IMG/VR virus record: IMGVR_UViG_3300031787_000001
Location: 62,001 to 126,000 of that record
Length of the DNA stretch: 64,000 bases
Direction: 5' to 3' (one strand)
The position numbers were made by a program, and so were the translations under genes. Shown one piece after another: positions 19,683-29,733 of this stretch; the stretch's first letter is position 1, and the number at the start of each line of letters is the position of its first letter. The notes under the pieces are model-generated. The model searched no databases, was not told the DNA's origin, and worked only from the letters and a program-made list of their open reading frames with translations.

Positions 19683-19728
19683 TTTGTTTTAAGGAATATA
19701 TTGTTTATCTTTGTTTTGTTCTTTGACA
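19683..19728 (+). promoter_or_regulatory. Bacteroidota-type promoter followed by boxA-like element
   Basis: TTTG 19683-19686, 19 nt spacer, TATCTTTG 19706-19713, GTTCTTTGACA 19718-19728. Confidence 0.7.
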
Positions 19729-19743
19729 TTTTTGGAAATAGTT

Positions 19744-19832
19744 GCCCCGGTGGTGGAACAGGTAGACACGCAGGACTTAAAATCCTGTGGACCGAAACGT
19801 CCGTGCGGGTTCGATTCCCGCCTGGGGCACCA
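19744..19832 (+). tRNA. tRNA-Leu(UAA)
   Basis: cloverleaf, cagga-cttaaaa-tcctg, long variable arm, CCA encoded. Confidence 0.95.
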
Positions 19833-19869
19833 ATACTATCGTTCTTTGACATATAAGGAGAAACAAATT

Positions 19870-20235
19870 ATGGAAATACTTTTCTTTATTTTAGGAATTA
19901 CTTCCGTGGTGGTTATTGCGACCGCAATAGTTGCTGTGGTAAGTATTGTTAAGGTAACAAAGTTACAAACAAAAGTTAAAGATGGTTTTGATGGTGTTTA
20001 TCATTCAATTGATAATACACATACTTCCATCGATAACACAAAAAGAGATACTCACGATAACATCGGAAGATTAAATGAAGAAGTTAATCGTAGAGTTGAT
20101 AACCTCGAAAGAGAAACCTTCTCACAGTTAGATTCTCGATTAGATAAGTTGGAAACGAAGTTAAAAACTTACGTTCACACTAATGCAACCATGATGAAAC
20201 TTGCATTAGATACACATAAAGCAACATCAAAATAA
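19870..20235 (+). CDS. membrane-anchored coiled-coil protein
   Basis: ATG 19870 with AAGGAG at 19855-19860; N-terminal TM helix; flanked by 19-bp inverted repeat. Confidence 0.7.
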   Translation: MEILFFILGITSVVVIATAIVAVVSIVKVTKLQTKVKDGFDGVYHSIDNTHTSIDNTKRDTHDNIGRLNEEVNRRVDNLERETFSQLDSRLDKLETKLKTYVHTNATMMKLALDTHKATSK

Positions 20236-20391
20236 AATAAAAGTCAAAAGAACGATAGTATTAAGGTTGAACGGGGAATGAAGATTAAGACACCTGTTGG
20301 TGGTTGGTGATTATCTTCGGAGTTGGAACCAACATAGTAATGCCGTTCGTAAAAGAGGATGTCCACTCGACCATCTTCCTCTTTCCTTCTT

Positions 20392-20462
20392 GGTCTCATA
20401 GTTTAAGGGAAAAACGGTAGCCTTCTAAGCTTCTGATCCTAGTTCGAGTCTAGGTGAGACTA
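20392..20462 (+). tRNA. tRNA-Arg(UCU)
   Basis: ggtctca/tgagact acceptor, loop cttctaa. Confidence 0.85.
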
Positions 20463-20683
20463 CAAAGTTCCTGTAGGCCGCGGGATCGTAGTTCCTCTAT
20501 TCCACTGACAAAAGTCAAGAAAAGAGCCAGATCGTAAGCTGGATGGGTTGACAACTTTCCCACTGACTCGGAAAAAAGTTGTAAATTTTAAGCGGGTCCT
20601 CGCTTCCCACGGTTTAATAGTACAAGGATAATGAAGGGAATAATACGACCCCTAAGACCTGCTTTTATTAAAAAAAATAAAAT

Positions 20684-21115
20684 ATGAATTACAAATTAAA
20701 AGAAATGCCCGAAAAAGTATATTGGGCGGAAACAAAACAATTTACAGTTGAAAATGAAAATGGTGAAACATTTGATATTCGAATTGGTGAAAGTTCAAAA
20801 TTTACTGAATATTGGATTTGGAAAGATCCGGGTGGATGGGAAGAAATTGATGATGATGATCTTATGGAGTATATAAATGAACAATTTGCCGATGATGAAT
20901 GGGAATTTGAACTTTCTGCACAAAAAGAAAGAGAAGAAAAAATGGATAAAATTATTGATGAATATATTAAAGAAAATGGTGATCAAATAAAAATAGATGA
21001 ATTAGTGTCTAAAATAAGTAGAGAAAATCTATATCCACGAAATATCACATTTTACGAAGAGTTTTATCACAACTATCATTATGTCAATAAAAAAATAAAA
21101 CAACTTAATAAATAA
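20684..21115 (+). CDS. hypothetical acidic protein
   Basis: 143 aa ORF. Confidence 0.55.
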   Translation: MNYKLKEMPEKVYWAETKQFTVENENGETFDIRIGESSKFTEYWIWKDPGGWEEIDDDDLMEYINEQFADDEWEFELSAQKEREEKMDKIIDEYIKENGDQIKIDELVSKISRENLYPRNITFYEEFYHNYHYVNKKIKQLNK

Positions 21116-21117
21116 AA

Positions 21118-21321
21118 ATGGAAAATTATAGAAAAGTATTAATTTTTGTGATGTGTTTTTTGGTCACATTTATCGGTGGCATTATTGTTACAGAATTATC
21201 CGCCTATCTTTTAACTTTACCAAATACAATTGCAAATATTTTTGGTTATATCATTTTAATCACTACCTTTGTATTGATCCTCTTATTAGGACATAAATTA
21301 GTAAAATCTTTAAACAAATAA
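21118..21321 (+). CDS. small membrane protein (2 TM)
   Basis: two hydrophobic segments. Confidence 0.6.
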   Translation: MENYRKVLIFVMCFLVTFIGGIIVTELSAYLLTLPNTIANIFGYIILITTFVLILLLGHKLVKSLNK

Positions 21322-21332
21322 AAAAAACAGTT

Positions 21333-22277
21333 ATGATTGGAATTATCACATTTACCTTATCGGTAGTAGTATTAGGAATTTTATTCGGAGTATTTAACTT
21401 CAAAAATTATTTGTCAGAACCTGACAAGTACAATAATACAAAAATAAAAGCGAGTGCAGTTATTAAAGCGGTTGTTGTGTTTATTGTATCTATTATCTTG
21501 GCAATCATCAATCCAATTTCAGTTGAACGAATTGATGTTGGACACGTAGGATTAAAAATCAACAACACCGGAGATGAAAAAGGTATCAGTAAGACCACAT
21601 ATGTAACGGGTTGGGTGTTTTATAATAGTTGGTTATCTCGTATTAAGGAGTATCCCGTGACCCAACAACATGTAGATTACGAAGAAACCGCAATCATCAC
21701 AAAAGGTGGGTTCCAAGCGGTAATTAAACCAAGTTTTAACTGGTCTGTGAATCCATCCAATGCCGCTGATATGTATCAAAATCTCAGACAAGATGTTGAT
21801 CAGATTAAAGAAACTTGGTTGAAGAACGCTATTATAGGTGCCGTGAATGATGTTGCCAACTTATATAGTGTCGATTCAATTTTTAATCATCGAGCCGAAT
21901 TTGAATCTGACATTGTAAAAGAATGTAATTTAAGGGTTAGTAAATGGTTTAACGTATCTCAATTAAGAACAAATATTGTTCCTCCAAAAGAGATCACGGA
22001 AGCCATCAACCAAAAGACCAAGGCGGTTCAAGAAGCTCAAGCGGCTATCCAACAAAAGATCGTGGCCGAAGCTCAGGCTTTAACACAGATCGCAAAGGCA
22101 AAAGGTGATAGTGCTCAAGCGGTGATTGCAGCATCCGGTAGGGCTGAAGCGGTGAGAAAAGAACAACAATACTTAACACCGATGTATATTGAGTATATTA
22201 GAGCACAAAGATGGGATGGTAAGTATCCACAAACAATGCTCGGTTCTGGTGGAAATGTGTTGTTAAATTTGAAATAG
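21333..22277 (+). CDS. SPFH/band-7 (prohibitin-like) membrane protein
   Basis: two N-terminal TMs, RIDVGHVG, Ala-rich coiled coil, C-terminal WDGKYP. Confidence 0.85.
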   Translation: MIGIITFTLSVVVLGILFGVFNFKNYLSEPDKYNNTKIKASAVIKAVVVFIVSIILAIINPISVERIDVGHVGLKINNTGDEKGISKTTYVTGWVFYNSWLSRIKEYPVTQQHVDYEETAIITKGGFQAVIKPSFNWSVNPSNAADMYQNLRQDVDQIKETWLKNAIIGAVNDVANLYSVDSIFNHRAEFESDIVKECNLRVSKWFNVSQLRTNIVPPKEITEAINQKTKAVQEAQAAIQQKIVAEAQALTQIAKAKGDSAQAVIAASGRAEAVRKEQQYLTPMYIEYIRAQRWDGKYPQTMLGSGGNVLLNLK

Positions 22278-22284
22278 AATATTA

Positions 22285-22487
22285 AGTCAGGTGGCGGAAT
22301 AGAATGTAATGATGATTTGGACGATTAGTCGACACGTAATCACGTGACTATTTCTATCCTTATCAGATGTTGAATCATCGAATCTTACATTCTTTGGTAG
22401 ACGATAATCACGGAAACCTAATGAGGTAGAGAACGCAAGTGAGAGGTATCTGCGGATACCGTACGGGTTCGAATCCTGTCCTGACTA
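22285..22487 (+). ncRNA. tRNA-Leu-like RNA with ~93 nt D-loop hairpin insertion and remodelled anticodon arm
   Basis: acceptor agtcagg/cctgact; D motif tggcggaat...tggtagacg split by agaatgtaa...ttacattct; T arm acggg-ttcgaat-cctgt. Confidence 0.7.
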
Positions 22488-22501
22488 CAATTTTGATATT
22501 T

Positions 22502-23062
22502 ATGGGAATGTTAAGAAAAATAAAATATTGGTTTGAATACGAAGGAAGATATCTTCACAAAGATTTTATTAAAGGTGTAAAAAATCTGTGGAAATGGTTT
22601 CCAACTATTTGGAAAGATAGAGAACATGACTATCATTTTATTTTAGTTCTTCTTGAAAAGAAACTTAATTTTCAATCAAAATATATTGGTTATAAAAATA
22701 GACATTCAGAAGCAACTAGAGATTCTGAACGTATGATGACATGTGTTCGTCTTATACAAAAAATAAAAGAAGATTACTATAATACGGAATATGTGGATTA
22801 TCAAAAAAGTGAATTTCATTTTGATCCCATTCCCGATAGACCTACCCACAAACAACTTCGTATTGAGGAAATTTCAGATAATTTTGATGATTATTTTAAA
22901 ATATATCCTCGTATCTATAAAAAAGTTTTTAATGAACTTGATGTGGATCAAAGAAACTCAAAAAGAATTATTGCTATTCGTATGAGTTGGGAAAATCACA
23001 ACAGAGCAAAAAAACTTTTATTTAAAATGATGGAAAATCATATCGAGTCTTGGTGGGATTGA
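22502..23062 (+). CDS. hypothetical protein
   Basis: Trp-rich ORF (NLWKWFPTIWKDR...ESWWD); start moved to ATG 22502 after the tRNA-like RNA. Confidence 0.65.
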   Translation: MGMLRKIKYWFEYEGRYLHKDFIKGVKNLWKWFPTIWKDREHDYHFILVLLEKKLNFQSKYIGYKNRHSEATRDSERMMTCVRLIQKIKEDYYNTEYVDYQKSEFHFDPIPDRPTHKQLRIEEISDNFDDYFKIYPRIYKKVFNELDVDQRNSKRIIAIRMSWENHNRAKKLLFKMMENHIESWWD

Positions 23063-23099
23063 TTTTTTTTCTTATATTATATAAAATAAAACATAAATT

Positions 23100-23345
23100 A
23101 TGAAATGTATCAAATCAATTAAGTCAACTAAAAACACCGAAATCGGGGTAATTAAAAGAATTGACGACAAAGAAGCAGAATCAATGGTTAAATCAGGTTA
23201 TTGGAAATATGTTCCTAAATCTGAATTTAAAATTAAAAAAGTAAAAGAAGATGAAACATTAAGGGAACAATATCCCGCCAATGTTGAAGGATCAAAAGAA
23301 TTTAACAAGGCAAATAAAAAAAATAATAAAAAAGTTTCGAAATAA
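23100..23345 (+). CDS. hypothetical basic protein
   Basis: 81 aa ORF. Confidence 0.55.
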   Translation: MKCIKSIKSTKNTEIGVIKRIDDKEAESMVKSGYWKYVPKSEFKIKKVKEDETLREQYPANVEGSKEFNKANKKNNKKVSK

Positions 23346-23394
23346 TTTTTTTATTATTTCAAATTTACATATATTTGCATATATTTATAAGACA

Positions 23395-23487
23395 ATGACA
23401 AACTTGTTTAACATACTAACGATAGAGAATACACCAAATAATGGTGGTGGGTATGATGTGCCAGTATACAAACAAGTTCGGAGTTAA
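23395..23487 (+). CDS. leader peptide 1 (30 aa, MTNLFNILTIENTPNNGGGYDVPVYKQVRS) of tRNA array 1
   Basis: codons 6-25 all read by array-1 tRNAs; preceded by TATATTTG (23370-23377) and TATTTATA (23382-23389); followed by terminator. Confidence 0.8.
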   Translation: MTNLFNILTIENTPNNGGGYDVPVYKQVRS

Positions 23488-23547
23488 AAAAATTTATTAA
23501 AACAAAATAAACATAAACCCGAACACAAAAAGTTCGGGTTTTTTTTG
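23401..23547 (+). promoter_or_regulatory. attenuator 1 (1:2, antiterminator and terminator helices)
   Basis: aacttgttt (23401-09) pairs aaacaagtt (23470-78); gttcggagtt (23476-85) pairs aacccgaac (23516-24); terminator aaacccgaac/gttcgggttt plus U-run. Confidence 0.8.
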
Positions 23548-23568
23548 TTAATAGATCTTTGAAATAAT

Positions 23569-23642
23569 CGGGATGTAGTTCAGTCCGGTAGAATGCTTGG
23601 TTTGGGACCAAGATGTCGTAGGTTCGAATCCTGCCATCCCGA
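23569..23642 (+). tRNA. tRNA-Pro(UGG)
   Basis: cttgg-tttggga-ccaag. Confidence 0.93.
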
Positions 23643-23648
23643 CATAAT

Positions 23649-23720
23649 GTCTTCTTAGCTCAACGGTAGAGCAATTGGCTGTTAACCAATAGGTTTTAGG
23701 TTCGAATCCTAAAGAGGACG
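23649..23720 (+). tRNA. tRNA-Asn(GUU)
   Basis: attgg-ctgttaa-ccaat. Confidence 0.93.
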
Positions 23721-23725
23721 CAATC

Positions 23726-23807
23726 GCCCCGATGGTGGAATTGGTAGTCACGGCAGACTTAGGATCTGTTGCCTTATGGTGTGAGAGTTCGAGTCTCTCT
23801 TGGGGTA
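23726..23807 (+). tRNA. tRNA-Leu(UAG)
   Basis: gcaga-cttagga-tctgt, variable arm. Confidence 0.92.
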
Positions 23808-23816
23808 CATTAAATT

Positions 23817-23889
23817 GGCCGATTAGTTCAGCAGGTTAGAATGCGTGACTTGTAATCATGAGACGACAGTTCGATTCTGTCATTGGCCT
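23817..23889 (+). tRNA. tRNA-Thr(UGU)
   Basis: cgtga-cttgtaa-tcatg. Confidence 0.9.
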
Positions 23890-23894
23890 CATAA

Positions 23895-23968
23895 GCGGAT
23901 TTCGCCTAGTTGGCATGGCACCACACTTCCACTGTGGAATAGGGTCGGTTCGAGACCGTCAATCCGCT
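23895..23968 (+). tRNA. tRNA-Gly(UCC)
   Basis: ccaca-cttccac-tgtgg, U73. Confidence 0.88.
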
Positions 23969-24014
23969 CAGAATTTTTTTTATTCAAATATATTTTGTAT
24001 GTTTGAATTTGTAA

Positions 24015-24097
24015 GGTGTAGTTGAGCAATTGGTTGGCTCGCCGGACTGTAAATCCGGTCCCTTCGGGGCTTGTAGGTTCGAGTCCTACCTACACCA
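24015..24097 (+). tRNA. tRNA-Tyr(GUA)
   Basis: ccgga-ctgtaaa-tccgg, variable arm. Confidence 0.92.
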
Positions 24098-24103
24098 CAA
24101 ATT

Positions 24104-24175
24104 GCCGCTGTCGTCTAACGGTTAGGACGCGTCCCTTTCACGGACAAAATGCGAGTTCGATTCTCGTCGGTGGTA
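24104..24175 (+). tRNA. tRNA-Glu(UUC)
   Basis: gtcc-ctttcac-ggac. Confidence 0.9.
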
Positions 24176-24180
24176 CGATT

Positions 24181-24252
24181 GGTCTCATAGTTAATCGGCT
24201 ATAATATTGCCCTGTCACGGCAAAGTGCCGGGTTCGATTCCCGGTGGGACCG
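24181..24252 (+). tRNA. tRNA-Asp(GUC)
   Basis: ttgcc-ctgtcac-ggcaa. Confidence 0.92.
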
Positions 24253-24301
24253 CAAACTTCAGGAGTAATTAACCTGAAGATGGAAGGTTCGAAACTTTCG
24301 A

Positions 24302-24403
24302 TTGGCTATGGTGTAATGGGCACACTGGTCCCGTGATTGGCTCGGTTATCGTCGAGTTTCAGTCGGGACCGGGGGATTCAGGTTCAATTCCTGATTGGTC
24401 AGC
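24302..24403 (+). ncRNA. tRNA-like RNA with anticodon arm extended into a long hairpin
   Basis: D arm gtgt/acac; stem ggtccc/gggacc enclosing ~32 nt hairpin; T arm tcagg-ttcaatt-cctga. Confidence 0.6.
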
Positions 24404-24408
24404 AAAAT

Positions 24409-24482
24409 GGACCCTTAGCTCAGTAGGTTAGAGCAAATGACTCATAATCATTAGGTGCACGGTTCGAGCCCGTGAGGGTCCA
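24409..24482 (+). tRNA. tRNA(CAU), most likely Ile2 (lysidine, reads AUA)
   Basis: aatga-ctcataa-tcatt; GGACCCU acceptor resembles Ile2; leader 1 uses ATA codons. Confidence 0.8.
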
Positions 24483-24487
24483 CATTT

Positions 24488-24559
24488 AGTCCTTTAGCTT
24501 AGTGGGAAAGCGGTTGTCTTACATGCAACATAGAGTGTGTTCGATTCACACAGGGACTA
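24488..24559 (+). tRNA. tRNA-Val(UAC)
   Basis: gttgt-cttacat-gcaac. Confidence 0.88.
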
Positions 24560-24667
24560 CCCCCGATATGTATGTGTAAGCAAGAAGCATATCATCAGTT
24601 GGGATCTTACAGTCCACGAACTGGGGTCCGGTGGGAACCGGGATGAGAGTACCCGAACCTCTCAAAC

Positions 24668-24739
24668 GCAGATATAGCACAATGGTTAGTGTTCGGCCTT
24701 GCCAAGGCTGAGATGCCAGTTCGAATCTGACTATCTGCT
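24668..24739 (+). tRNA. tRNA-Gly(GCC)
   Basis: cggcc-ttgccaa-ggctg. Confidence 0.9.
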
Positions 24740-24744
24740 CAAAT

Positions 24745-24894
24745 TGTACTGTGGTGAAATTGGCAGACACCCCCACTCGTCTCGTGGGCGTCGACAACGA
24801 AATAGGTAAATGGATAAGGGTTGACCACAAGCTAGCTAGCATATTTGTCCTTTACCGAATCGCGACATAGACGGTTCGAATCCTCTCGGTACAG
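24745..24894 (+). ncRNA. tRNA-like RNA with Leu-type D arm and ~80 nt variable-arm hairpin
   Basis: acceptor tgtactg/cggtaca; D arm ggtgaaattggcagacac; arm cccac-tcgtctc-gtggg lacking U33; T loop ttcgaat. Confidence 0.65.
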
Positions 24895-24923
24895 CATATA
24901 TTTTTGACAAATAAAAATAGTTT

Positions 24924-25163
24924 ATGACGATCTTAATCGGCATCAATGAATTAGAAGAAGAATTTCAAATACCGTGGAAGATGGGATTAGTTAATCATTT
25001 GGTCATTGATTACGCAGACAACGCAATCTATGGTACATTTGAGAAAAAAGAAGTAATTATTTTTAGGTTCAAAAAATATGGTTGGGTTTGTGATAATAGA
25101 TACAATTTATACACACTATCAAGTGGTGAGGCAGGTATCATGATTAACATGAATTCAACATAA
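24924..25163 (+). CDS. hypothetical protein
   Basis: 79 aa ORF between tRNA arrays. Confidence 0.5.
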   Translation: MTILIGINELEEEFQIPWKMGLVNHLVIDYADNAIYGTFEKKEVIIFRFKKYGWVCDNRYNLYTLSSGEAGIMINMNST

Positions 25164-25187
25164 AATATTTATTAATAACAACATGTT

Positions 25188-25649
25188 ATGAGAAAATTTA
25201 AAACATTATTCGGAATTGAGATTGATAATCTTGCTGAATATATTAAAGAATATATTTCAACAAGAGAAAATGTGGAGATATTAGTTGGCGCCGATTCTCA
25301 AAATTATAGTAATAGAAAAACTATATATGGAGTTGTTATTGCCTTATACACAAAAGGTAAAGGTGCACATGTTTTGTGTTCAAGAGATACTGTTCCAATT
25401 GAGAGAAACACATCAACCAGATTACTTACTGAAGTTTGGAAATCAATTGAGACCGCAGAATTTTTAAAAGAAAATGGTTTACCAAAACCATTATGGATTG
25501 ATATTGACTTAAATCCTGATCCGAAATTTAAATCAAATACCGTATTAAGACAAGCGGTTGGTCTTGTTGAAGGTATGGGTTATCAAGTTAGATATAAACA
25601 ATTAGGTGCTATGGTAACATACGCCGCAAATCACTTAGTTAGAAATTAA
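25188..25649 (+). CDS. RNase H-like YkuK (DUF458) family protein
   Basis: LVGADSQ, RLLTEVWKSIE, IDIDLN, YAANHL. Confidence 0.75.
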   Translation: MRKFKTLFGIEIDNLAEYIKEYISTRENVEILVGADSQNYSNRKTIYGVVIALYTKGKGAHVLCSRDTVPIERNTSTRLLTEVWKSIETAEFLKENGLPKPLWIDIDLNPDPKFKSNTVLRQAVGLVEGMGYQVRYKQLGAMVTYAANHLVRN

Positions 25650-25661
25650 ATTATACTTTTC

Positions 25662-25692
25662 TTTGTTTTTACAATATTTATTATTATCTTTG
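25662..25692 (+). promoter_or_regulatory. Bacteroidota-type promoter for leader 2/array 2
   Basis: TTTG 25662-25665, 19 nt, TATCTTTG 25685-25692. Confidence 0.72.
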
Positions 25693-25714
25693 TAAAACAA
25701 AAGATTAAAAAAAT

Positions 25715-25878
25715 AAATTCGATGAAACAGTTCAAACATATTATGTCGTTTATTAGTTGTTCAAAATGGGCAAGTCAGCGTCATATCCGTATGTCCCGAT
25801 CTGTTTGTATGAATTTGTGTTAAAATATTTTAATAAGTAATTCAAAAAAACCTCGGGACAAAATCTCGAGGTTTTTTG
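25715..25878 (+). promoter_or_regulatory. attenuator 2 (antiterminator/terminator)
   Basis: tgtcccga (25792-99) is the exact complement of tcgggaca (25853-60); terminator cctcggga/tctcgagg plus U6; aaacag (25725-30) pairs ctgttt (25801-06) and aaattc (25715-20) pairs gaattt (25811-16). Confidence 0.82.
25722..25823 (+). CDS. leader peptide 2 (33 aa, MKQFKHIMSFISCSKWASQRHIRMSRSVCMNLC) of tRNA array 2
   Basis: codons 1-27 all fall in codon families read by array-2 tRNAs; not in ORF track because <60 aa. Confidence 0.82.
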   Translation: MKQFKHIMSFISCSKWASQRHIRMSRSVCMNLC

Positions 25879-25884
25879 TTTTAT

Positions 25885-25957
25885 GGGCTGTCATGTTCCA
25901 AGGCTGGCGAAGGACCCTTGCAAGGTCTTTGGGAGATTTCGATTATCTCACGGTCCA
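25885..25957 (+). tRNA. tRNA-Ala(UGC), atypical D arm
   Basis: G3.U70 acceptor, ggacc-cttgcaa-ggtct. Confidence 0.85.
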
Positions 25958-25963
25958 CATAAT

Positions 25964-26037
25964 GTTCGGGTAGATCAATTGGTGAGATCATTCGCCTGAT
26001 ACGCGAAAGGTTGTAGGTTCGAGTCCTACTCCGAACA
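25964..26037 (+). tRNA. tRNA-Ile(GAU)
   Basis: ttcgc-ctgatac-gcgaa. Confidence 0.92.
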
Positions 26038-26042
26038 CGAAT

Positions 26043-26115
26043 GGTACACAAGCTAACTTAGTAGAAGCATTGGACTGAAAATCCAAGGGACTTGGAGCGT
26101 AACCAAGGTGTACCA
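26043..26115 (+). tRNA. tRNA-Phe(GAA), non-canonical D and T loops
   Basis: ttgga-ctgaaaa-tccaa; T loop agcgtaa. Confidence 0.8.
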
Positions 26116-26124
26116 CAAACATAT

Positions 26125-26198
26125 TCCCTCGTAACTCAATTGGCTAGAGTACCACACTTTTAATGTGGGAGTTTCGAGTTCGAATCTCGACGGGGGAA
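26125..26198 (+). tRNA. tRNA-Lys(UUU)
   Basis: ccaca-cttttaa-tgtgg. Confidence 0.92.
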
Positions 26199-26202
26199 CA
26201 AT

Positions 26203-26274
26203 GGTCGGATGGCCGAGTGGATTAGGTGGAGGTCTGCAAAACCTCTTACGTCAGTTCGATTCTGACTCCGACCT
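26203..26274 (+). tRNA. tRNA-Cys(GCA)
   Basis: gaggt-ctgcaaa-acctc, U73. Confidence 0.93.
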
Positions 26275-26281
26275 CAAATAC

Positions 26282-26354
26282 ACGGGTGTGGTGAAATTGG
26301 TTATCATTTCGGTCTCCAAAACCGACGTTTCAGATTCGAATTCTGACATCCGTG
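26282..26354 (+). tRNA. tRNA-Trp(CCA)
   Basis: tcggt-ctccaaa-accga. Confidence 0.92.
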
Positions 26355-26358
26355 CAAT

Positions 26359-26431
26359 GGTTCTATGGTGTAATGGATTAGCACACGAAGCTACGGACTT
26401 CGGAGTTTGGGTTCGAGTCCTAATAGAACCA
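26359..26431 (+). tRNA. tRNA-Arg(ACG)
   Basis: cgaag-ctacgga-cttcg. Confidence 0.9.
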
Positions 26432-26436
26432 CATAT

Positions 26437-26508
26437 TGTTCCGTGATGTAATGGTTAGCATACAAGAATTTGACTCTTGTAGTATAGGTTCGAGTCCTAT
26501 CGGAACAT
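26437..26508 (+). tRNA. tRNA-Gln(UUG)
   Basis: caaga-atttgac-tcttg, U1-A72. Confidence 0.88.
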
Positions 26509-26514
26509 CATAAA

Positions 26515-26597
26515 GGAGAGGTCGTATAGTGGTTTAGTACAGTAGTCTTGAAAACTACCGAGTTTAGGCTCCGTGGGTTCGAATCCCACCCTCTCCG
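26515..26597 (+). tRNA. tRNA-Ser(UGA)
   Basis: gtagt-cttgaaa-actac, variable arm, G73. Confidence 0.92.
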
Positions 26598-26602
26598 CAT
26601 AT

Positions 26603-26680
26603 GGTGGCCTGAGATGGGTTGGTTACATCGTCAGATTGTGGCTCTGAAGAACACGGGTTCGACTCCCGTAGGTCACACCA
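26603..26680 (+). tRNA. tRNA-His(GUG)
   Basis: tcaga-ttgtggc-tctga, G-1, CCA encoded. Confidence 0.88.
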
Positions 26681-26683
26681 AAA

Positions 26684-26772
26684 GGAGAGTAAACTACGAC
26701 GGTGAGTAGACATGCCTGCTAAGCATTGTGTTCGTTAATTCGGATGAGGTTCGATCCCTCTACTCTCCGCCA
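26684..26772 (+). tRNA. tRNA-Ser(GCU)
   Basis: loop ctgctaa, variable arm, GCCA end. Confidence 0.85.
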
Positions 26773-26775
26773 AAT

Positions 26776-26848
26776 GCCGTGGGTTAGTGGAATACGACTA
26801 TCTCTCATAAGGATGGAGAACACAGTTCGAACCTGTGCTACGGTACCA
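26776..26848 (+). tRNA. tRNA-Met(CAU), elongator, atypical D arm
   Basis: tatct-ctcataa-ggatg, T arm cacag/ctgtg, CCA. Confidence 0.7.
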
Positions 26849-26868
26849 AAAAAAAGTTTTAAAAAGAT

Positions 26869-27162
26869 TTTGTATTTTAAAAAAGTATTTATATCTTTGT
26901 AAAAGTTCTTTAAACATCGTGGCGTGGAGAAGTGGTATCTCACTAGGCTCATAACCTAGGGACCGTTGGTTCGAATCCAACCGCCGCAACAAAAAAGTTT
27001 TAAAAAGATTTTGTTTTTTGAAAAACTCTTTTTATATTTGTAAAACAATTCGGTAATACACACCGAAAAAGTTCTTAAAAAAAAAGTTTGACAAAAATTT
27101 GGAAAGTTGAAAAACACTTCTTATCTTTGTAAAACAATCGGAAACGATAAAGTTCTTTGAAA
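26869..27162 (+). promoter_or_regulatory. three tandem, mutually similar Bacteroidota-type promoters with boxA-like elements
   Basis: TTTG/TAnnTTTG pairs at 26869/26892, 27010/27033, 27098/27122; GTTCTTTRAA at 26905 and 27152. Confidence 0.75.
26918..26989 (+). tRNA. initiator tRNA-fMet(CAU)
   Basis: C1:A72 mismatch, ctagg-ctcataa-cctag. Confidence 0.88.
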
Positions 27163-27164
27163 AT

Positions 27165-27965
27165 ATTGGGCGGTCTATAGTCCATAAAATAAACCATGAA
27201 AGTGGTATAAAGTGGAATACCTTGGTTTTGGTATTCTGCGGCTTGGGTAACCGAGCTCGAGTAGACAAACGAGATATCGTCTGACCTTTAGTACTGAGGG
27301 TAACACTGTAGGGAAAGTGGTTGGGCGATCAAGCGATGTGGGTCGTTTGGTTGAGGTGGGAACACCAATAAGAATAACTCGTAGAATTATTGCAAGAAAT
27401 GTTGTTATCCGACTTCATAATTGCGTTTTTCAATATTATGGTTGTCTTAAAACCGAAAGGTATGTTAGTGTACAGGTGGTGCTGTTATTAACCTTAACCT
27501 TAGCCTACCAAGGCATGAGTTATGAAGATGAGCAAAAATATGGAGGTGGGGACATCTCAGAGGGTAGTTTAGTATTTAGCCGTTCAAAAGATGGCTGAGC
27601 TGGTGACGAACCACTACCTTCACAATCCACAAACCAATAACTTGCATCCATTTAATTGCAAAATTAATAAATCAAGGAAAAGTGTTCGTCAGTTGTGGAT
27701 GACAGGTCACTACATAGTCATGAGTTGTTCATGGCCATGAAGGGTCCCAAGCCCAACATGATTTTCACCAAAGTTCTCTAATCTCGCAAGGATTAATTGG
27801 GGTGGCAACCTCGAAGAGTGATGAGTAATGAGAGAGTGATTCACAACTTAAGGATTGGTTAATCTAATTGACCGTGACTGATTATTACTACTCAAAAGGT
27901 AGTGGATAAGGGAAGAATCAATAATGTCCCAAAGATAATCACCCGAACGTGTAATCTCAGCGTTT
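27165..27965 (+). ncRNA. ~800 nt structured RNA, probably GOLLD
   Basis: ORF-poor, GC-elevated, many hairpins (e.g. gaatacc/ggtattc, gcttgg/ccgagc, ttagccgtt/gatggctga, ctact/agtag); size and tRNA-cluster/phage context fit GOLLD; family assignment not verified. Confidence 0.6.
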
Positions 27966-28031
27966 TATTTTCCTGATTTTTATAAAATCATGGTGGTGGA
28001 GTAATAAAAAGATTTCATGCCGCAAGGCCCC

Positions 28032-28059
28032 AAAGGTTAGATTTTTCTAACCTTTTTTT
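28032..28059 (+). terminator. intrinsic terminator after large RNA
   Basis: aaaggttaga-tttt-tctaaccttttttt. Confidence 0.75.
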
Positions 28060-28091
28060 GTTTTTATATTTTTTTTATTTATATTATACCT

Positions 28092-28844
28092 ATGAGATTA
28101 ATTTGTATATCAGACACACATTCTTTACATGAAAGAATGACACATAAAGTTGAAAAATATATCGATCCTGATCAAGACAATATACTCATCCATGCGGGGG
28201 ATTGTACTAATATGGGTAGAGAACCTGAAATTATTGAATTTGTTTATTGGTATCAAAATTTAAAAGGATTTGATACCAAGATCTTTATTGCGGGTAATCA
28301 TGATTTTGGTTTTGAACATTATAATGGTCTTCGTCATAGTAATGAGGCACCTTGGTTACATCATATAATAAATGAGGAGAATTTATCTCAATCAGATGTC
28401 GTTTATCTTCATGATTCTGAATTTGTAATTGAACATCCGAAATTTTCAAGACCAATTAAATTTTATGGAAGTCCTTGGCAACCTGAATTTTATAATTGGG
28501 CATTTAATCTTCCAAGAAATGGTTGGGAGTTAGAACTTAAATGGAAAGAAATACCAGATGATACTGATATATTGATCACACACGGACCTCCACATGGTTG
28601 TAGAGATTTTACACCACAAAATTTACAAGTTGGTTGTGAATTGTTGAGATATAGATTAGATACATTAAAACCACTTGTCCATGTGTTTGGACATATTCAT
28701 CATGCATATGGTGGTGCATATATTGATGATGTTTTATACATTAACGCATCAACATGTACAGAAAGATATGTCCCACGTAATAGACCTATTGTTGTTGATT
28801 TAAAAGAAGAAGATGGTAAAATAGTTACTACCTATATTGATTAA
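28092..28844 (+). CDS. calcineurin-like metallophosphoesterase
   Basis: DTH, HAGD, GNHD, THGPP, GHIH motifs. Confidence 0.9.
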   Translation: MRLICISDTHSLHERMTHKVEKYIDPDQDNILIHAGDCTNMGREPEIIEFVYWYQNLKGFDTKIFIAGNHDFGFEHYNGLRHSNEAPWLHHIINEENLSQSDVVYLHDSEFVIEHPKFSRPIKFYGSPWQPEFYNWAFNLPRNGWELELKWKEIPDDTDILITHGPPHGCRDFTPQNLQVGCELLRYRLDTLKPLVHVFGHIHHAYGGAYIDDVLYINASTCTERYVPRNRPIVVDLKEEDGKIVTTYID

Positions 28845-28885
28845 GTTTTTCATTTTTATATGATATTTATATATAAACAATATCT

Positions 28886-29086
28886 ATGAAAAATATAATT
28901 GATTTTTTAAAAAACCTATTAACAAAAAAATCTGAAGAAGTTATTTCAGAAATAAAACAAAAGGTTGTATCTGAAATAAAGGGTGAACCTGAGAAAGTAG
29001 AAGAACCTGTTAAGGTTGAGGAACCAAAAGAAGAAATCGTCGAAGAAAAACCCAAAAAAAGAGGTAGAAAGAAAAAGGTAGATTAA
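28886..29086 (+). CDS. small K/E-rich hypothetical protein
   Basis: 66 aa, ends KPKKRGRKKKVD. Confidence 0.55.
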   Translation: MKNIIDFLKNLLTKKSEEVISEIKQKVVSEIKGEPEKVEEPVKVEEPKEEIVEEKPKKRGRKKKVD

Positions 29087-29167
29087 TAAAAAAAATAAAA
29101 GATAAATTGGGTTAAATTTTTATTTAACCCTTTTTTTGTCTATATTTGTGAAAGTTCTTTAAAATAT

Positions 29168-29560
29168 GGGGGTGTCCAGGTATTGATTGGCGTTTATATG
29201 GTAAATGGGCACGTAGTCAGATGTCATCTATGACTTAAATCTACGGTGGTAAAAATCAAACGGCAACGTTTACAACAACATGGAAATTGCAGGTATCCTT
29301 GCAACTTCTAAAGTAGCTGCTTAATAAGTACCTACTGTCGGGTCGGTTAGGACATATAACCCAGGAACAGAAGTCCGTTATACGGGTCACAGGTCAGAGC
29401 TCGTTTAAAATAATTCTGAGACCAAGTTGTTTGTAGGTAGGTTTCTCACATATATCAAACCTAATATTTTGGAACATTGAGAACCAATGTTATACTAAAC
29501 GTGTAGTCCATCTATTGTATGGCGAACAAGACAAGGGTTCGATTCCCTTCACCTCCACCA
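29168..29560 (+). ncRNA. ssrA: tmRNA
   Basis: GGGGGUG/CACCUCC-ACCA acceptor with G3.U70, T arm aaggg-ttcgatt-ccctt; internal tag frame 29262-29324 GNVYNNMEIAGILATSKVAA*; promoter 29141, boxA 29154, terminator 29567-29593. Confidence 0.93.
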
Positions 29561-29733
29561 AAAATTAAACCCATCGAATTCGATGGGTTTTTTATTTATA
29601 ATAACTGAGGTTTATAAACGAACAAAGAGGTCTTTAGGACCCCTTTGTCGAGATTTGGAATACCCCCTTTCGTTTTTTTCGAGTTATCATCTAATGGCGA
29701 CCAAACCATTAAACTCTAATATAAATATCTAAT

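What the first reader, a model, noticed from the sequence alone, without database searches (positions are those of the whole stretch)
19718..29164. boxA-like elements at the start of phage RNA transcription units
Seen: G(T/A)TCTTT(G/A)A(C/A)A at 19718, 19841, 23554, 26905, 27152 and 29154, just before tRNA-Leu, the IR-flanked ORF, array 1, fMet, the large RNA and tmRNA. Established: boxA (GCTCTTTAACA-like) recruits NusB/NusE antitermination on rRNA operons. Inference: the phage treats its RNA genes as rRNA-like operons to avoid Rho termination.
Basis: partly seen in the sequence, partly recalled or inferred. Interest (0 to 1): 0.6.

Follow-up and report, generated by a model that had tools for sequence, protein, structure and literature searches.

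The report
Host-type boxA leaders on phage RNA genes
A 287-kb phage of Bacteroidota puts the same short signal that its host phylum uses at the start of ribosomal RNA operons (boxA) directly in front of its own tRNA, tmRNA and giant GOLLD RNA genes. This probably lets host factors carry RNA polymerase through these untranslated genes without stopping early.

Summary
All six sites exist, all lie on the sense strand, and each sits 13-26 nt before an RNA gene or before the ORF flanked by inverted repeats. A matrix built from 62 Bacteroidota rrn-leader boxA sites places 5 of its 6 best hits in the whole 287-kb phage genome at these sites. The site before GOLLD (27152) is identical over 17 nt to the rrn-leader boxA of several Bacteroidota. 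The two sites at tRNA-Leu carry the 16S-23S spacer form, GTTCTTTGACAT.

Four sites lie 4-5 nt after a Bacteroidota-type -7 box, or 22 nt after one with a small hairpin in between. That is a shortened copy of the host rrn layout (promoter, hairpin, A-rich stretch, boxA). The element is conserved in related phages while its flanks diverge. It occurs at 5 of 7 RNA unit starts against 4 of 379 protein-gene upstream regions.

Three qualifications apply:
- tRNA array 2 and tRNA-Arg have no boxA.
- Some related phages lack it before tmRNA or the 26918-type (initiator-like) tRNA-Met.
- Some cellular Bacteroidota ssrA genes and tRNA operons carry it too, so the phage copies a host stable-RNA leader, not only rRNA.

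NusB/S10 binding and resistance to Rho remain inferred, not shown. I rate it a new member of a known kind, of moderate interest.

The parts
19683..19713 (+). Bacteroidota-type promoter of the tRNA-Leu unit: -33 TTTG (19683-19686), 19-nt spacer, -7 box TATCTTTG (19706-19713)
   Evidence: Sequence; composite and promoter scans; consensus TTTG/TAnnTTTG and the -12 to -5 position of the -7 box from PMC7366714 and PMC9723704
19718..19729 (+). boxA, spacer type (GTTCTTTGACAT). It starts 4 nt after the -7 box, so at about +1 of the predicted transcript, and lies 26 nt before tRNA-Leu
   Evidence: matrix score 15.5; conserved in 10 related leaders (alignment A1)
19744..19832 (+). tRNA-Leu(taa)
19841..19852 (+). 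Second boxA, spacer type. It lies 8 nt after tRNA-Leu and before the ORF, inside the 5' arm of the inverted repeat (19832-19847)
   Evidence: (score 16.7)
19870..20235 (+). ORF of 121 aa (N-terminal hydrophobic segment, no confident family), enclosed by the inverted repeat
20247..20262 (+). 3' arm of the inverted repeat (16 nt, 100% complementary to 19832-19847). It acts like the trailer strand of a leader-trailer helix
   Evidence: conserved with compensatory changes in related phages
20392..20463 (+). tRNA-Arg(tct), with no boxA of its own
23515..23541 (+). GC-rich hairpin followed by a T-run (terminator-like) directly before the array-1 boxA
23554..23565 (+). boxA-like element (GATCTTTGAAAT), 15 nt before tRNA-Pro, the first gene of array 1. 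No consensus promoter was found in front of it
   Evidence: score 16.3; its core equals the B. subtilis boxA core that binds NusB (PMC13753749)
23569..24740 (+). tRNA array 1 (11 tRNAs)
25845..26680 (+). Terminator-like hairpin (25845-25877), then tRNA array 2 (a tRNA-like sequence from about 25886; called tRNAs 25964-26680). NO boxA here; this is the negative case
   Evidence: best score -7.1
26869..26899 (+). Promoter of the 26918 tRNA-Met unit: TTTG, 19-nt spacer, TATCTTTG
26905..26916 (+). boxA (GTTCTTTAAACA), 5 nt after the -7 box and 13 nt before tRNA-Met
   Evidence: score 11.1
27033..27081 (+). GOLLD promoter P1: -7 box TATATTTG (27033-27040), 6-bp hairpin (27049-27067), degenerate boxA GTTCTTAAAAA (27071-27081)
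   Evidence: (score 8.7)
27122..27168 (+). GOLLD promoter P2: -7 box TATCTTTG (27122-27129), 4-bp hairpin with GGAAAC loop region (27137-27148), AAA, leader-type boxA GTTCTTTGAAAATATTG (27152-27168)
   Evidence: (score 22.0, best in the genome); identical 17-mer in host rrn leaders
27168..28055 (+). GOLLD RNA (conserved 5' block from about 27168; Rfam RF02032 match 27560-27963) and its terminator (28032-28055)
29141..29148 (+). -7 box TATATTTG of the tmRNA unit, directly after the terminator of the upstream genes (29109-29130)
29154..29165 (+). boxA (GTTCTTTAAAAT), 5 nt after the -7 box and 14 nt before tmRNA. Same position as in some cellular Bacteroidota ssrA genes
   Evidence: (score 17.9)
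29168..29590 (+). tmRNA (29168-29560) and terminator (29567-29590)

Best explanation
The elements are genuine boxA sequences of the kind found in the host phylum. They are written into the first nucleotides of transcripts that host sigma-A RNA polymerase starts at consensus Bacteroidota promoters on the phage.

Inferred mechanism: as the nascent RNA emerges, host NusB-S10 binds boxA and, with NusG, NusA and the other rrn factors, converts the polymerase into the fast, termination-resistant form used on rRNA operons. That polymerase would then transcribe untranslated phage RNAs without being stopped by Rho. These RNAs are the tRNA-Leu-ORF-tRNA-Arg unit, the 1.2-kb tRNA array 1, the roughly 0.85-kb GOLLD RNA, tmRNA and the 26918 tRNA-Met. 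The complex may also help them fold. At 19841 boxA sits in the leader strand of a conserved long-range helix, as boxA does beside the leader-trailer helices of rRNA. RNase P would later remove the boxA leader from the tRNAs and tmRNA.

Shown here: sequence identity with host rrn boxA, position, strand, promoter context, conservation, and restriction to RNA genes. Inferred: factor binding, antitermination and the folding role.
For: 1. Host comparison. 120 Bacteroidota rrn loci were fetched. Their 16S leaders carry GTTC(T/A)TTGAAAATATTG-like boxA 80-180 nt before 16S. 63 of 71 16S-23S spacers carry GTTC(T/A)TTGACATATTG. This leader-plus-spacer arrangement is the classical one for boxA.
2. A matrix built from the leader sites ranks window 27152, 29154, 19841, 23554 and 19718 among the top 6 hits of the whole phage genome on both strands. 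Simulated genomes give 1.3 hits at a score of 16 or more, against 5 observed.
3. 27152 matches the host leader form over 17 nt. The tRNA-Leu sites match the spacer form.
4. Of 67 full-consensus promoters (TTTG-N17-21-TAnnTTTG) in the genome, only 3 have boxA (score 11 or more) downstream, and all 3 are RNA-gene promoters. GOLLD P1 is fourth.
5. 5 of 7 RNA unit starts carry the element, against 4 of 379 protein-gene upstream regions (p = 4e-8).
6. Distance from the -7 box varies: 4-5 nt, or 22 nt with a hairpin, and one copy follows a tRNA with no promoter. Distance to the RNA gene stays short. All copies are on the sense strand. This fits an RNA element better than a DNA promoter element.
7. 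The layout -7 box, hairpin (often with a GGAAAC loop), A-rich stretch, boxA is also the usual layout of host rrn promoters.
8. Related phages, whose neighbouring phosphoesterase is down to about 55% identical, keep boxA before tRNA-Leu, after tRNA-Leu, before GOLLD and before tmRNA while the flanks change.
9. Precedent from papers: boxA with NusB-S10 builds the rrn antitermination complex. The B. subtilis boxA, AUGAUCUUUGAAA, binds NusB (PMC13753749). The gamma-proteobacterial consensus is GYTCTTTAANA, boxA regulation extends beyond rRNA, and non-coding RNAs were explicitly not surveyed (PMC5725501). PMC13753749 also cites boxA upstream of CRISPR operons.
10. The phage encodes no NusB of its own, so it would depend on the host factor.
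Against: - No experiment or transcript data are available.
- Array 2 (0.8 kb) and tRNA-Arg have no boxA.
- Some relatives lack boxA before tmRNA (L124, L143, L144, L146) or the 26918-type tRNA-Met (L138, L141, L147), so it is dispensable for short RNAs.
- GOLLD in an unrelated 642-kb phage has no boxA.
- 23554 follows a terminator-like hairpin and has no recognisable promoter. If that hairpin terminates transcription, the boxA could only act on read-through transcripts.
- In three units boxA starts at about +1 or +2 of the predicted transcript, closer to the 5' end than in any studied rrn operon.
- Tightly folded tRNAs are poor Rho substrates anyway.
- boxA function has not been tested in any Bacteroidota that I could find.
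Confidence: 0.62

Rival explanations
1. The motif works at the DNA level, as part of a special promoter class for very strong or timed initiation. It would be an initially transcribed or discriminator-like region, or the binding site of a phage or host regulator, and would have nothing to do with Nus factors.
For: In three units the motif starts 4-5 nt after the -7 box, that is at the predicted start site (-7 box at -12 to -5, PMC9723704). Its TCTTTG part resembles the TTTG end of the -7 box. It is confined to a small set of promoters.
Against: - Spacing to the -7 box is not fixed: 4-5 nt, 22 nt or 30 nt, with a hairpin inserted. In L144 a hairpin was inserted in the tRNA-Leu leader.
- The copies at 19841 and 23554 have no promoter in front.
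- In host rrn operons the same motif lies 19-111 nt after the -7 box, and again in the 16S-23S spacer far from any promoter.
- The variants at 26905 and 29154 have A where the -7 box needs G.
Confidence: 0.12
2. The motif is an RNA processing or stability signal of precursor leaders. It would be a recognition or spacing element for RNase P, RNase III or RNase E, or one strand of a processing helix, not a Nus-factor site.
For: The motif lies 13-26 nt before mature 5' ends that RNase P makes (tRNA, tmRNA). The 19841 copy is one strand of a conserved helix of 16 to about 20 bp around the ORF, with compensatory changes among relatives. This resembles RNase III stems of rRNA precursors.
Against: - Only one of the six copies has a complementary partner.
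- Internal tRNAs of the arrays are processed without it.
- Sequence, not structure, is conserved, and the motif is predicted single-stranded.
- Identity with rrn leader and spacer boxA is not explained by RNase P, which needs no leader sequence.
- 0 of 30 Bacteroidota RNase P RNA genes have it. Their -7 boxes abut the mature 5' end, so these genes have essentially no leader and are a weak control for this rival.
- The two roles are not exclusive. In rRNA, boxA and leader-trailer helices work together (PMC10250234).
Confidence: 0.1
3. The motif is a passenger. The phage took tRNA and tmRNA genes from Bacteroidota hosts together with their leaders, and the boxA copies persist without function in the phage.
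For: 6 of 30 cellular Bacteroidota ssrA genes score 14 or more at -15/-16, and about 10 of 30 carry a GTTCTTT-like core (most at -15/-16, two at -10). This is close to the position seen in the phage. About 4 of 16 cellular tRNA operon leaders have boxA-like elements.
Against: - GOLLD has no match in cellular Bacteroidota that I know of, yet it has the best boxA, two promoters and the hairpin.
- The element is kept across phages whose flanking sequence has diverged completely.
- It also stands between tRNA-Leu and a phage ORF.
- A useless 12-mer would decay in a 30% GC genome.
Confidence: 0.06
4. Chance occurrence of an AT-rich 11-mer in a 30% GC genome.
For: By count alone the window has 5 matches against 1.3 expected, and 1 of 100 shuffles also reaches 5. 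Several other matches in the genome lie inside genes.
Against: Positional clustering (5 of the top 6 genome-wide hits directly before RNA genes), the sense-strand rule, conservation in relatives and the Fisher test.
Confidence: 0.01

Closest known systems
boxA of bacterial rrn operons (rrn antitermination complex: NusB, S10/NusE, NusA, NusG, SuhB, S4)
   Same: The sequence is the host phylum's own boxA in both its leader and spacer forms. It is on the sense strand, downstream of a strong housekeeping promoter, upstream of untranslated structured RNA, preceded by a small hairpin and an A-rich stretch (GOLLD unit), and once placed beside a leader-trailer-like helix (PMC10250234, PMC13753749).
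   Different: It lies in a phage and stands in front of tRNA, tmRNA and GOLLD genes rather than 16S or 23S. The leaders are very short: boxA starts at about +1 to +18 and ends 1-14 nt before the mature RNA. Factor binding and antitermination were not tested.
boxA in front of CRISPR arrays and of suhB and other genes in gamma-proteobacteria
   Same: boxA is used outside rRNA to protect a long untranslated, repetitive RNA array from Rho, or to regulate a gene. The consensus GYTCTTTAANA fits 29154 exactly (PMC5725501; CRISPR operons cited in PMC13753749).
   Different: Different phylum, different cargo (tRNA arrays, tmRNA, giant ncRNA), and phage-borne. The published survey explicitly left non-coding RNAs out (PMC5725501).
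nut sites of lambdoid phages (boxA plus boxB, read by phage N protein with host Nus factors)
   Same: A phage uses a host-type boxA in nascent RNA to make host polymerase termination-resistant.
   Different: In nut sites boxA comes before boxB, and a phage N protein is needed. Here the hairpin, where present, precedes boxA as in rrn leaders, most copies have no hairpin, and no N-like protein was identified (not searched for specifically). The targets are RNA genes, not delayed-early protein operons.
Leaders of cellular Bacteroidota ssrA (tmRNA) genes and some tRNA operons
   Same: A boxA-like GTTC(T/A)TT element lies 15-16 nt before the tmRNA 5' end in 6 of 30 sampled genomes at a score of 14 or more (about 10 of 30 with the core, two of them at -10). 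Similar elements lie in about 4 of 16 tRNA operon leaders. The distance in the phage is 14 nt.
   Different: This cellular arrangement is itself undescribed as far as my searches show. It is patchy across genomes and absent from RNase P RNA genes.

Membership tests
boxA (Nus-factor loading site of rrn-type antitermination) | Sequence matches the boxA consensus of the organism's own rrn operons | tested here: met
   The exact host is unknown, so the comparison is at phylum level. 27152 is identical over 17 nt to rrn-leader boxA of several Bacteroidota. 19718 and 19841 equal the spacer form. Matrix scores of 15.5-22.0 lie inside the range of real rrn sites (11.1-27.0, median 20.5). 26905 is weaker at 11.1.
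boxA (Nus-factor loading site of rrn-type antitermination) | Lies in the transcribed sense strand, after a promoter and before the RNA to be protected | tested here: met
   All six copies are on the strand of the RNA genes. Four lie 4-22 nt after consensus -33/-7 promoters. This rests on promoter prediction and the published -12 to -5 position of the -7 box (PMC9723704), with no transcript data. 23554 has no recognisable promoter.
boxA (Nus-factor loading site of rrn-type antitermination) | Conserved against diverging flanks in related genomes | tested here: met
   The invariant columns of alignment A1 fall in the T-run/-33 region, the -7 box and boxA. The element is present at homologous places in many related phage contigs. 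It is lost in some lineages before tmRNA or the 26918-type tRNA-Met.
boxA (Nus-factor loading site of rrn-type antitermination) | Accompanying leader layout as in rrn operons (hairpin before boxA) | tested here: inconclusive
   Met for GOLLD P1 and P2 and their relatives: hairpins of 4-8 bp whose sequence varies. The same layout is seen in host rrn leaders. It is absent at the tRNA-Leu, tRNA-Met and tmRNA units. The hairpins are weak (z-scores -0.1 to -2.8).
boxA (Nus-factor loading site of rrn-type antitermination) | Bound by NusB-S10 | not testable with these tools
   The complex predictor takes proteins only. The phage has no NusB of its own. Needs EMSA, NMR or ChIP.
boxA (Nus-factor loading site of rrn-type antitermination) | Confers read-through of Rho-dependent (and some intrinsic) terminators | not testable with these tools
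Needs reporter assays with and without bicyclomycin.
Lambdoid nut site | boxA followed by a boxB hairpin that a phage N protein binds | tested here: not met
   Where a hairpin exists it precedes boxA. No hairpin follows boxA before the mature RNA. No search for an N protein was made.
Bacteroidota sigma-A promoter | -33 TTTG and -7 TAnnTTTG about 19 nt apart | tested here: met
   Met at 19683/19706, 26869/26892, and at P1 (27033) and P2 (27122). The tmRNA unit has the -7 box (29141) but only a poor -33 (consensus from PMC7366714).
GOLLD RNA (RF02032) | Is boxA part of the GOLLD family itself? | tested here: not met
   GOLLD of the 642-kb phage LR756502 has the same conserved 5' block but no boxA in front. 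boxA is therefore a leader of this phage group, not part of GOLLD.

The most novel reading that the evidence does not exclude
In Bacteroidota the Nus-factor/boxA system may not be a dedicated rRNA device. It could be a general loading signal for stable RNAs (rRNA, many ssrA genes, some tRNA operons), and large lake phages have taken it over. On the phage it would act mainly as a co-transcriptional folding and looping machine for the giant GOLLD RNA and for the helix around the tRNA-Leu/tRNA-Arg insert. The abundant boxA leader fragments cut off by RNase P could in addition soak up NusB-S10 and so throttle host ribosome synthesis during infection.
Probability: 0.12. Interest if true: 0.8.

Novelty: new member of a known kind. 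Interest (0 to 1): 0.55.

Why it matters
- It would be the first case, as far as my searches of the held literature show, of a phage placing host rrn-type boxA leaders on its own tRNA, tmRNA and giant non-coding RNA genes.
- It gives a concrete and testable answer to how long untranslated phage RNA arrays escape Rho.
- It ties GOLLD, whose function is unknown, to the host machinery that speeds and chaperones rRNA synthesis.
- The host survey done on the way indicates that boxA also precedes many ssrA genes and some tRNA operons in Bacteroidota. The Nus system is essentially unstudied in this phylum.
- The consensus promoter plus boxA cassette is also a ready-made part for expressing non-coding RNAs in Bacteroidota.

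Tried and rejected
No starts, ends or read-through could be seen.
- Phage-encoded NusB: none found (Pfam PF01029 on the whole genome). Ten ORFs around the RNA genes gave only SPFH/Band 7, an RNase H-like domain and a metallophosphoesterase, and nothing related to transcription.
- 'The motif is only a second -7 box': rejected. Two copies have A where the box needs G, spacing varies, and the motif recurs in host 16S-23S spacers.
- 'boxA belongs to GOLLD': rejected.
- 'All stable RNAs of Bacteroidota have boxA': rejected. 0 of 30 RNase P RNA genes have it.
- Other strong hits in the genome are not RNA leaders. Genome 41874 lies inside a gene. 171718 lies in a divergent intergenic region. 154808 lies just after a -7 box and before a protein gene.
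- Twelve-mer hits in five complete Bacteroidota genomes outside rrn were mostly inside genes.
The T at motif position 5 (GTTCTTT) is seen in Bacteroidales, Marinilabiliales, Sphingobacteriales and Chryseobacterium loci, whereas marine Flavobacteriaceae mostly have GTTCATT.
- Literature searches for boxA with tmRNA, with phage tRNA, with Bacteroidetes and with GOLLD found no description of this arrangement.
- Caveats of my own methods: gene calls are crude longest-ORF calls, and the matrix core was selected with a pattern.

Full report
WHAT THE WINDOW IS

The window is bases 62001-126000 of a 286,785-bp phage record (IMG/VR, about 86% complete, 30% GC). All of the phage's RNA genes lie in one cluster inside the window. 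They are 23 tRNAs called by ARAGORN, a GOLLD RNA (RF02032, 27560-27963, 338 bits) and a tmRNA (29168-29560). The nearest database relatives are uncultured huge phages and Flavobacterium phages. The promoters are of the Bacteroidota type, so the host is a member of Bacteroidota.

THE OBSERVATION

The sixth site, 26905, reads GTTCTTTAAAC followed by A, one mismatch from the pattern.
- tRNA-Leu at 19744
- the ORF at 19870
- tRNA-Pro at 23569 (start of array 1)
- tRNA-Met at 26918
- the GOLLD 5' block near 27168
- tmRNA at 29168

By count alone the excess is modest: 5 against 1.27 expected, and 1 shuffle in 100 reaches 5. The case rests on position and comparison.

CONTEXT: HOST-TYPE PROMOTERS

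The sites at 19718, 26905 and 29154 start 4-5 nt after a perfect -7 box (TATCTTTG or TATATTTG). Two of the three (19718, 26905) also have a -33 TTTG 19 nt upstream of the -7 box.

GOLLD has two tandem promoters, P1 (27033) and P2 (27122). Each is followed by TAAAACAA, a small hairpin, an A-rich stretch and then the motif. The motif is degenerate at P1 (27071) and perfect at P2 (27152).

The consensus TTTG/TAnnTTTG is the published sigma-A promoter of the phylum (PMC7366714), and the -7 box occupies -12 to -5 (PMC9723704). The motif would therefore begin at about +1 or +2 of the tRNA-Leu, tRNA-Met and tmRNA transcripts, and at about +18 of the P2 transcript. This is a prediction; there are no transcript data.

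Genome-wide, the pairing of a -7 box with the motif is almost confined to this cluster.

IS IT THE HOST'S boxA?

I fetched 120 Bacteroidota rrn loci through a conserved 16S word. In their 16S leaders GTTCTTTG is among the most widely shared 8-mers. It sits in a block, GTTC(T/A)TTGAAAATATTGAA, 80-180 nt before 16S. In the 16S-23S spacer, 63 of 71 loci carry GTTC(T/A)TTGACATATTG. One copy in the leader and one in the spacer is the classical boxA arrangement.

The phage site at 27152 (GTTCTTTGAAAATATTG) is identical over 17 nt to the leader form of several loci, for example L003, L022, L049, L051 and L105. The two tRNA-Leu sites (GTTCTTTGACAT) carry the spacer form. In several relatives the tRNA-Leu site reads GTTCTTTGACATATTGG, identical to the spacer boxA of Pedobacter- and Mucilaginibacter-type loci. 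The site at 23554 has the core GAUCUUUGAAA, which in B. subtilis binds NusB (PMC13753749). The site at 29154 fits the gamma-proteobacterial consensus GYTCTTTAANA (PMC5725501).

STATISTICS

A position matrix from 62 distinct rrn-leader sites was run over both strands of the phage genome. The six best hits are 27152 (22.0), 29154 (17.9), a site inside a gene at genome 41874 (17.0), 19841 (16.7), 23554 (16.3) and 19718 (15.5). The site at 26905 scores 11.1. Second-order Markov genomes give 1.3 hits at a score of 16 or more, against 5 observed.

- Of 67 full-consensus promoters in the genome, only three have a hit of 11 or more within 45 nt downstream. All three are RNA-gene promoters, and GOLLD P1 is fourth.
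- Five of seven RNA unit starts have a hit, against 4 of 379 protein-gene upstream regions (Fisher p = 4e-8).

Two caveats apply: the matrix core was chosen with a pattern, so only the flanks are independent, and the gene calls are crude.

CONSERVATION

Eighty related phage contigs were fetched through the phosphoesterase gene that lies between GOLLD and tmRNA. Across them boxA recurs at the homologous places:
- 20-29 nt before tRNA-Leu
- directly after tRNA-Leu
- 3-12 nt before the GOLLD 5' block, after a hairpin whose sequence differs between lineages
- 14-15 nt before tmRNA

In an alignment of ten tRNA-Leu leaders, the invariant columns fall in the T-run/-33 region, the -7 box and boxA, while the rest varies. 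In L144 a hairpin has been inserted between the -7 box and boxA, yet the distance to the tRNA is kept.

The element is not universal. Some lineages have the tmRNA or the 26918-type tRNA-Met directly after the -7 box with no boxA. In the window itself, array 2 starts right after a terminator-like hairpin without boxA, and tRNA-Arg has none. GOLLD in the unrelated 642-kb phage LR756502 has no boxA.

THE SAME LAYOUT IN HOST rrn OPERONS

In host leaders the -7 box is followed by a hairpin (often with a GGAAAC loop), an A-rich stretch and boxA. The most common distance between the -7 box and boxA is 40-43 nt. GOLLD P1 and P2 are shortened versions of this, at 30 and 22 nt, and P2 has the same GGAAAC loop.

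THE INVERTED REPEAT

The boxA at 19841 lies in the 5' arm of a 16-nt perfect inverted repeat, 19832-19847 with 20247-20262. The repeat encloses the 121-aa ORF between tRNA-Leu and tRNA-Arg.

Related phages keep a helix of about 20 bp at the same place, with compensatory changes: AATAC/GTATT here against AACAC/GTGTT in relatives. This resembles the leader-trailer helices that flank rRNAs and work together with the antitermination complex (PMC10250234).

HOST CELLS USE THE ELEMENT BEYOND rRNA

- ssrA: in 30 Bacteroidota ssrA loci, 6 have a matrix hit of 14 or more, all at -15/-16 from the tmRNA 5' end. About 10 carry a GTTCTTT-like core, most at -15/-16 and two at -10. The phage distance is 14 nt.
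- tRNA operons: about 4 of 16 leaders from three genomes have boxA-like elements between the -7 box and the first tRNA.
- RNase P RNA: 0 of 30 genes have it.

The phage is therefore following a host design for some stable RNAs, not only for rRNA. I found no paper describing this.

MECHANISM

Best explanation (confidence about 0.6): host NusB-S10 binds the nascent boxA and converts host polymerase into the rrn-type, termination-resistant and faster form. This protects long untranslated phage RNAs from Rho and may aid their folding and long-range pairing.

The sequence-level steps are shown here. Binding and antitermination are inferred from E. coli and B. subtilis work (PMC13753749, PMC5725501, PMC10250234). 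The phage has no NusB of its own.

Rivals:
- a DNA-level promoter element (0.12)
- an RNA processing signal (0.10, and not exclusive with boxA function)
- a passenger taken up with host genes (0.06)
- chance (0.01)

VERDICT

The boxA identification is well supported at the sequence level. The functional claim is plausible but untested. The finding is a new member of a known kind, in a new setting (phage tRNA, tmRNA and GOLLD genes in Bacteroidota). Interest 0.55.

Noticed in passing
Loci L231-L260 (cellular Bacteroidota ssrA genes), about 10-16 nt before the tmRNA 5' end: About a third of sampled Bacteroidota tmRNA genes have a boxA-like GTTC(T/A)TT element just before the mature 5' end. Six of 30 score 14 or more, all at -15/-16; two further core-only cases sit at -10. 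RNase P RNA genes (L292-L321) have none. I found no description of this in the literature.
   Followed up: partly
window 19832-19847 and 20247-20262: A perfect 16-nt inverted repeat encloses a 121-aa ORF between tRNA-Leu and tRNA-Arg. Related phages keep the helix with compensatory changes, and the insert varies from about 320 to 560 nt. It may be an RNase III-type leader-trailer stem or the ends of a small mobile insert.
   Followed up: partly
window 23515-23541 and 25845-25877: Both tRNA arrays begin 8-27 nt after a strong terminator-like hairpin with a T-run, and no recognisable promoter lies between. Relatives show the same arrangement (for example L147 tRNA-Ala and L154 tRNA-Pro). How the arrays are transcribed is open.
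   Followed up: no
window 24742-24895, 25886-25960, 26683-26850: tRNA-like stretches that ARAGORN does not call. 26683-26769 gives a weak tRNA-Sec-like Rfam hit (38 bits, below the cut-off), probably a tRNA with a long variable arm. 26775-26850 looks like a further tRNA with a CAU anticodon. 24742-24895 has a tRNA-like 3' end after a long insert.
   Followed up: partly
window 27168-27560: The Rfam GOLLD model covers only the 3' half. A conserved 5' block (GGGCGGTCTATAGTCC-like) about 400 nt upstream is shared with related phages and with the 642-kb phage LR756502, so the RNA is about 0.8-0.85 kb long.
   Followed up: partly
L123 7909-8120, L148 11151-11365, L152 11811-12014: Group I introns (RF00028) lie downstream of the tmRNA region in related phages.
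   Followed up: no
window 25188-25649 and 21333-22277: An RNase H-like protein (PF04308) lies between the two tRNA arrays, and an SPFH/Band 7 protein lies upstream of array 1.
   Followed up: no
G000 genome 154773-154835 (outside the window): This is the only place where a -7 box is directly followed by a GTTCTTTAA motif before a protein gene. The matrix score is low and the ATG lies 20 nt downstream.
   Followed up: partly
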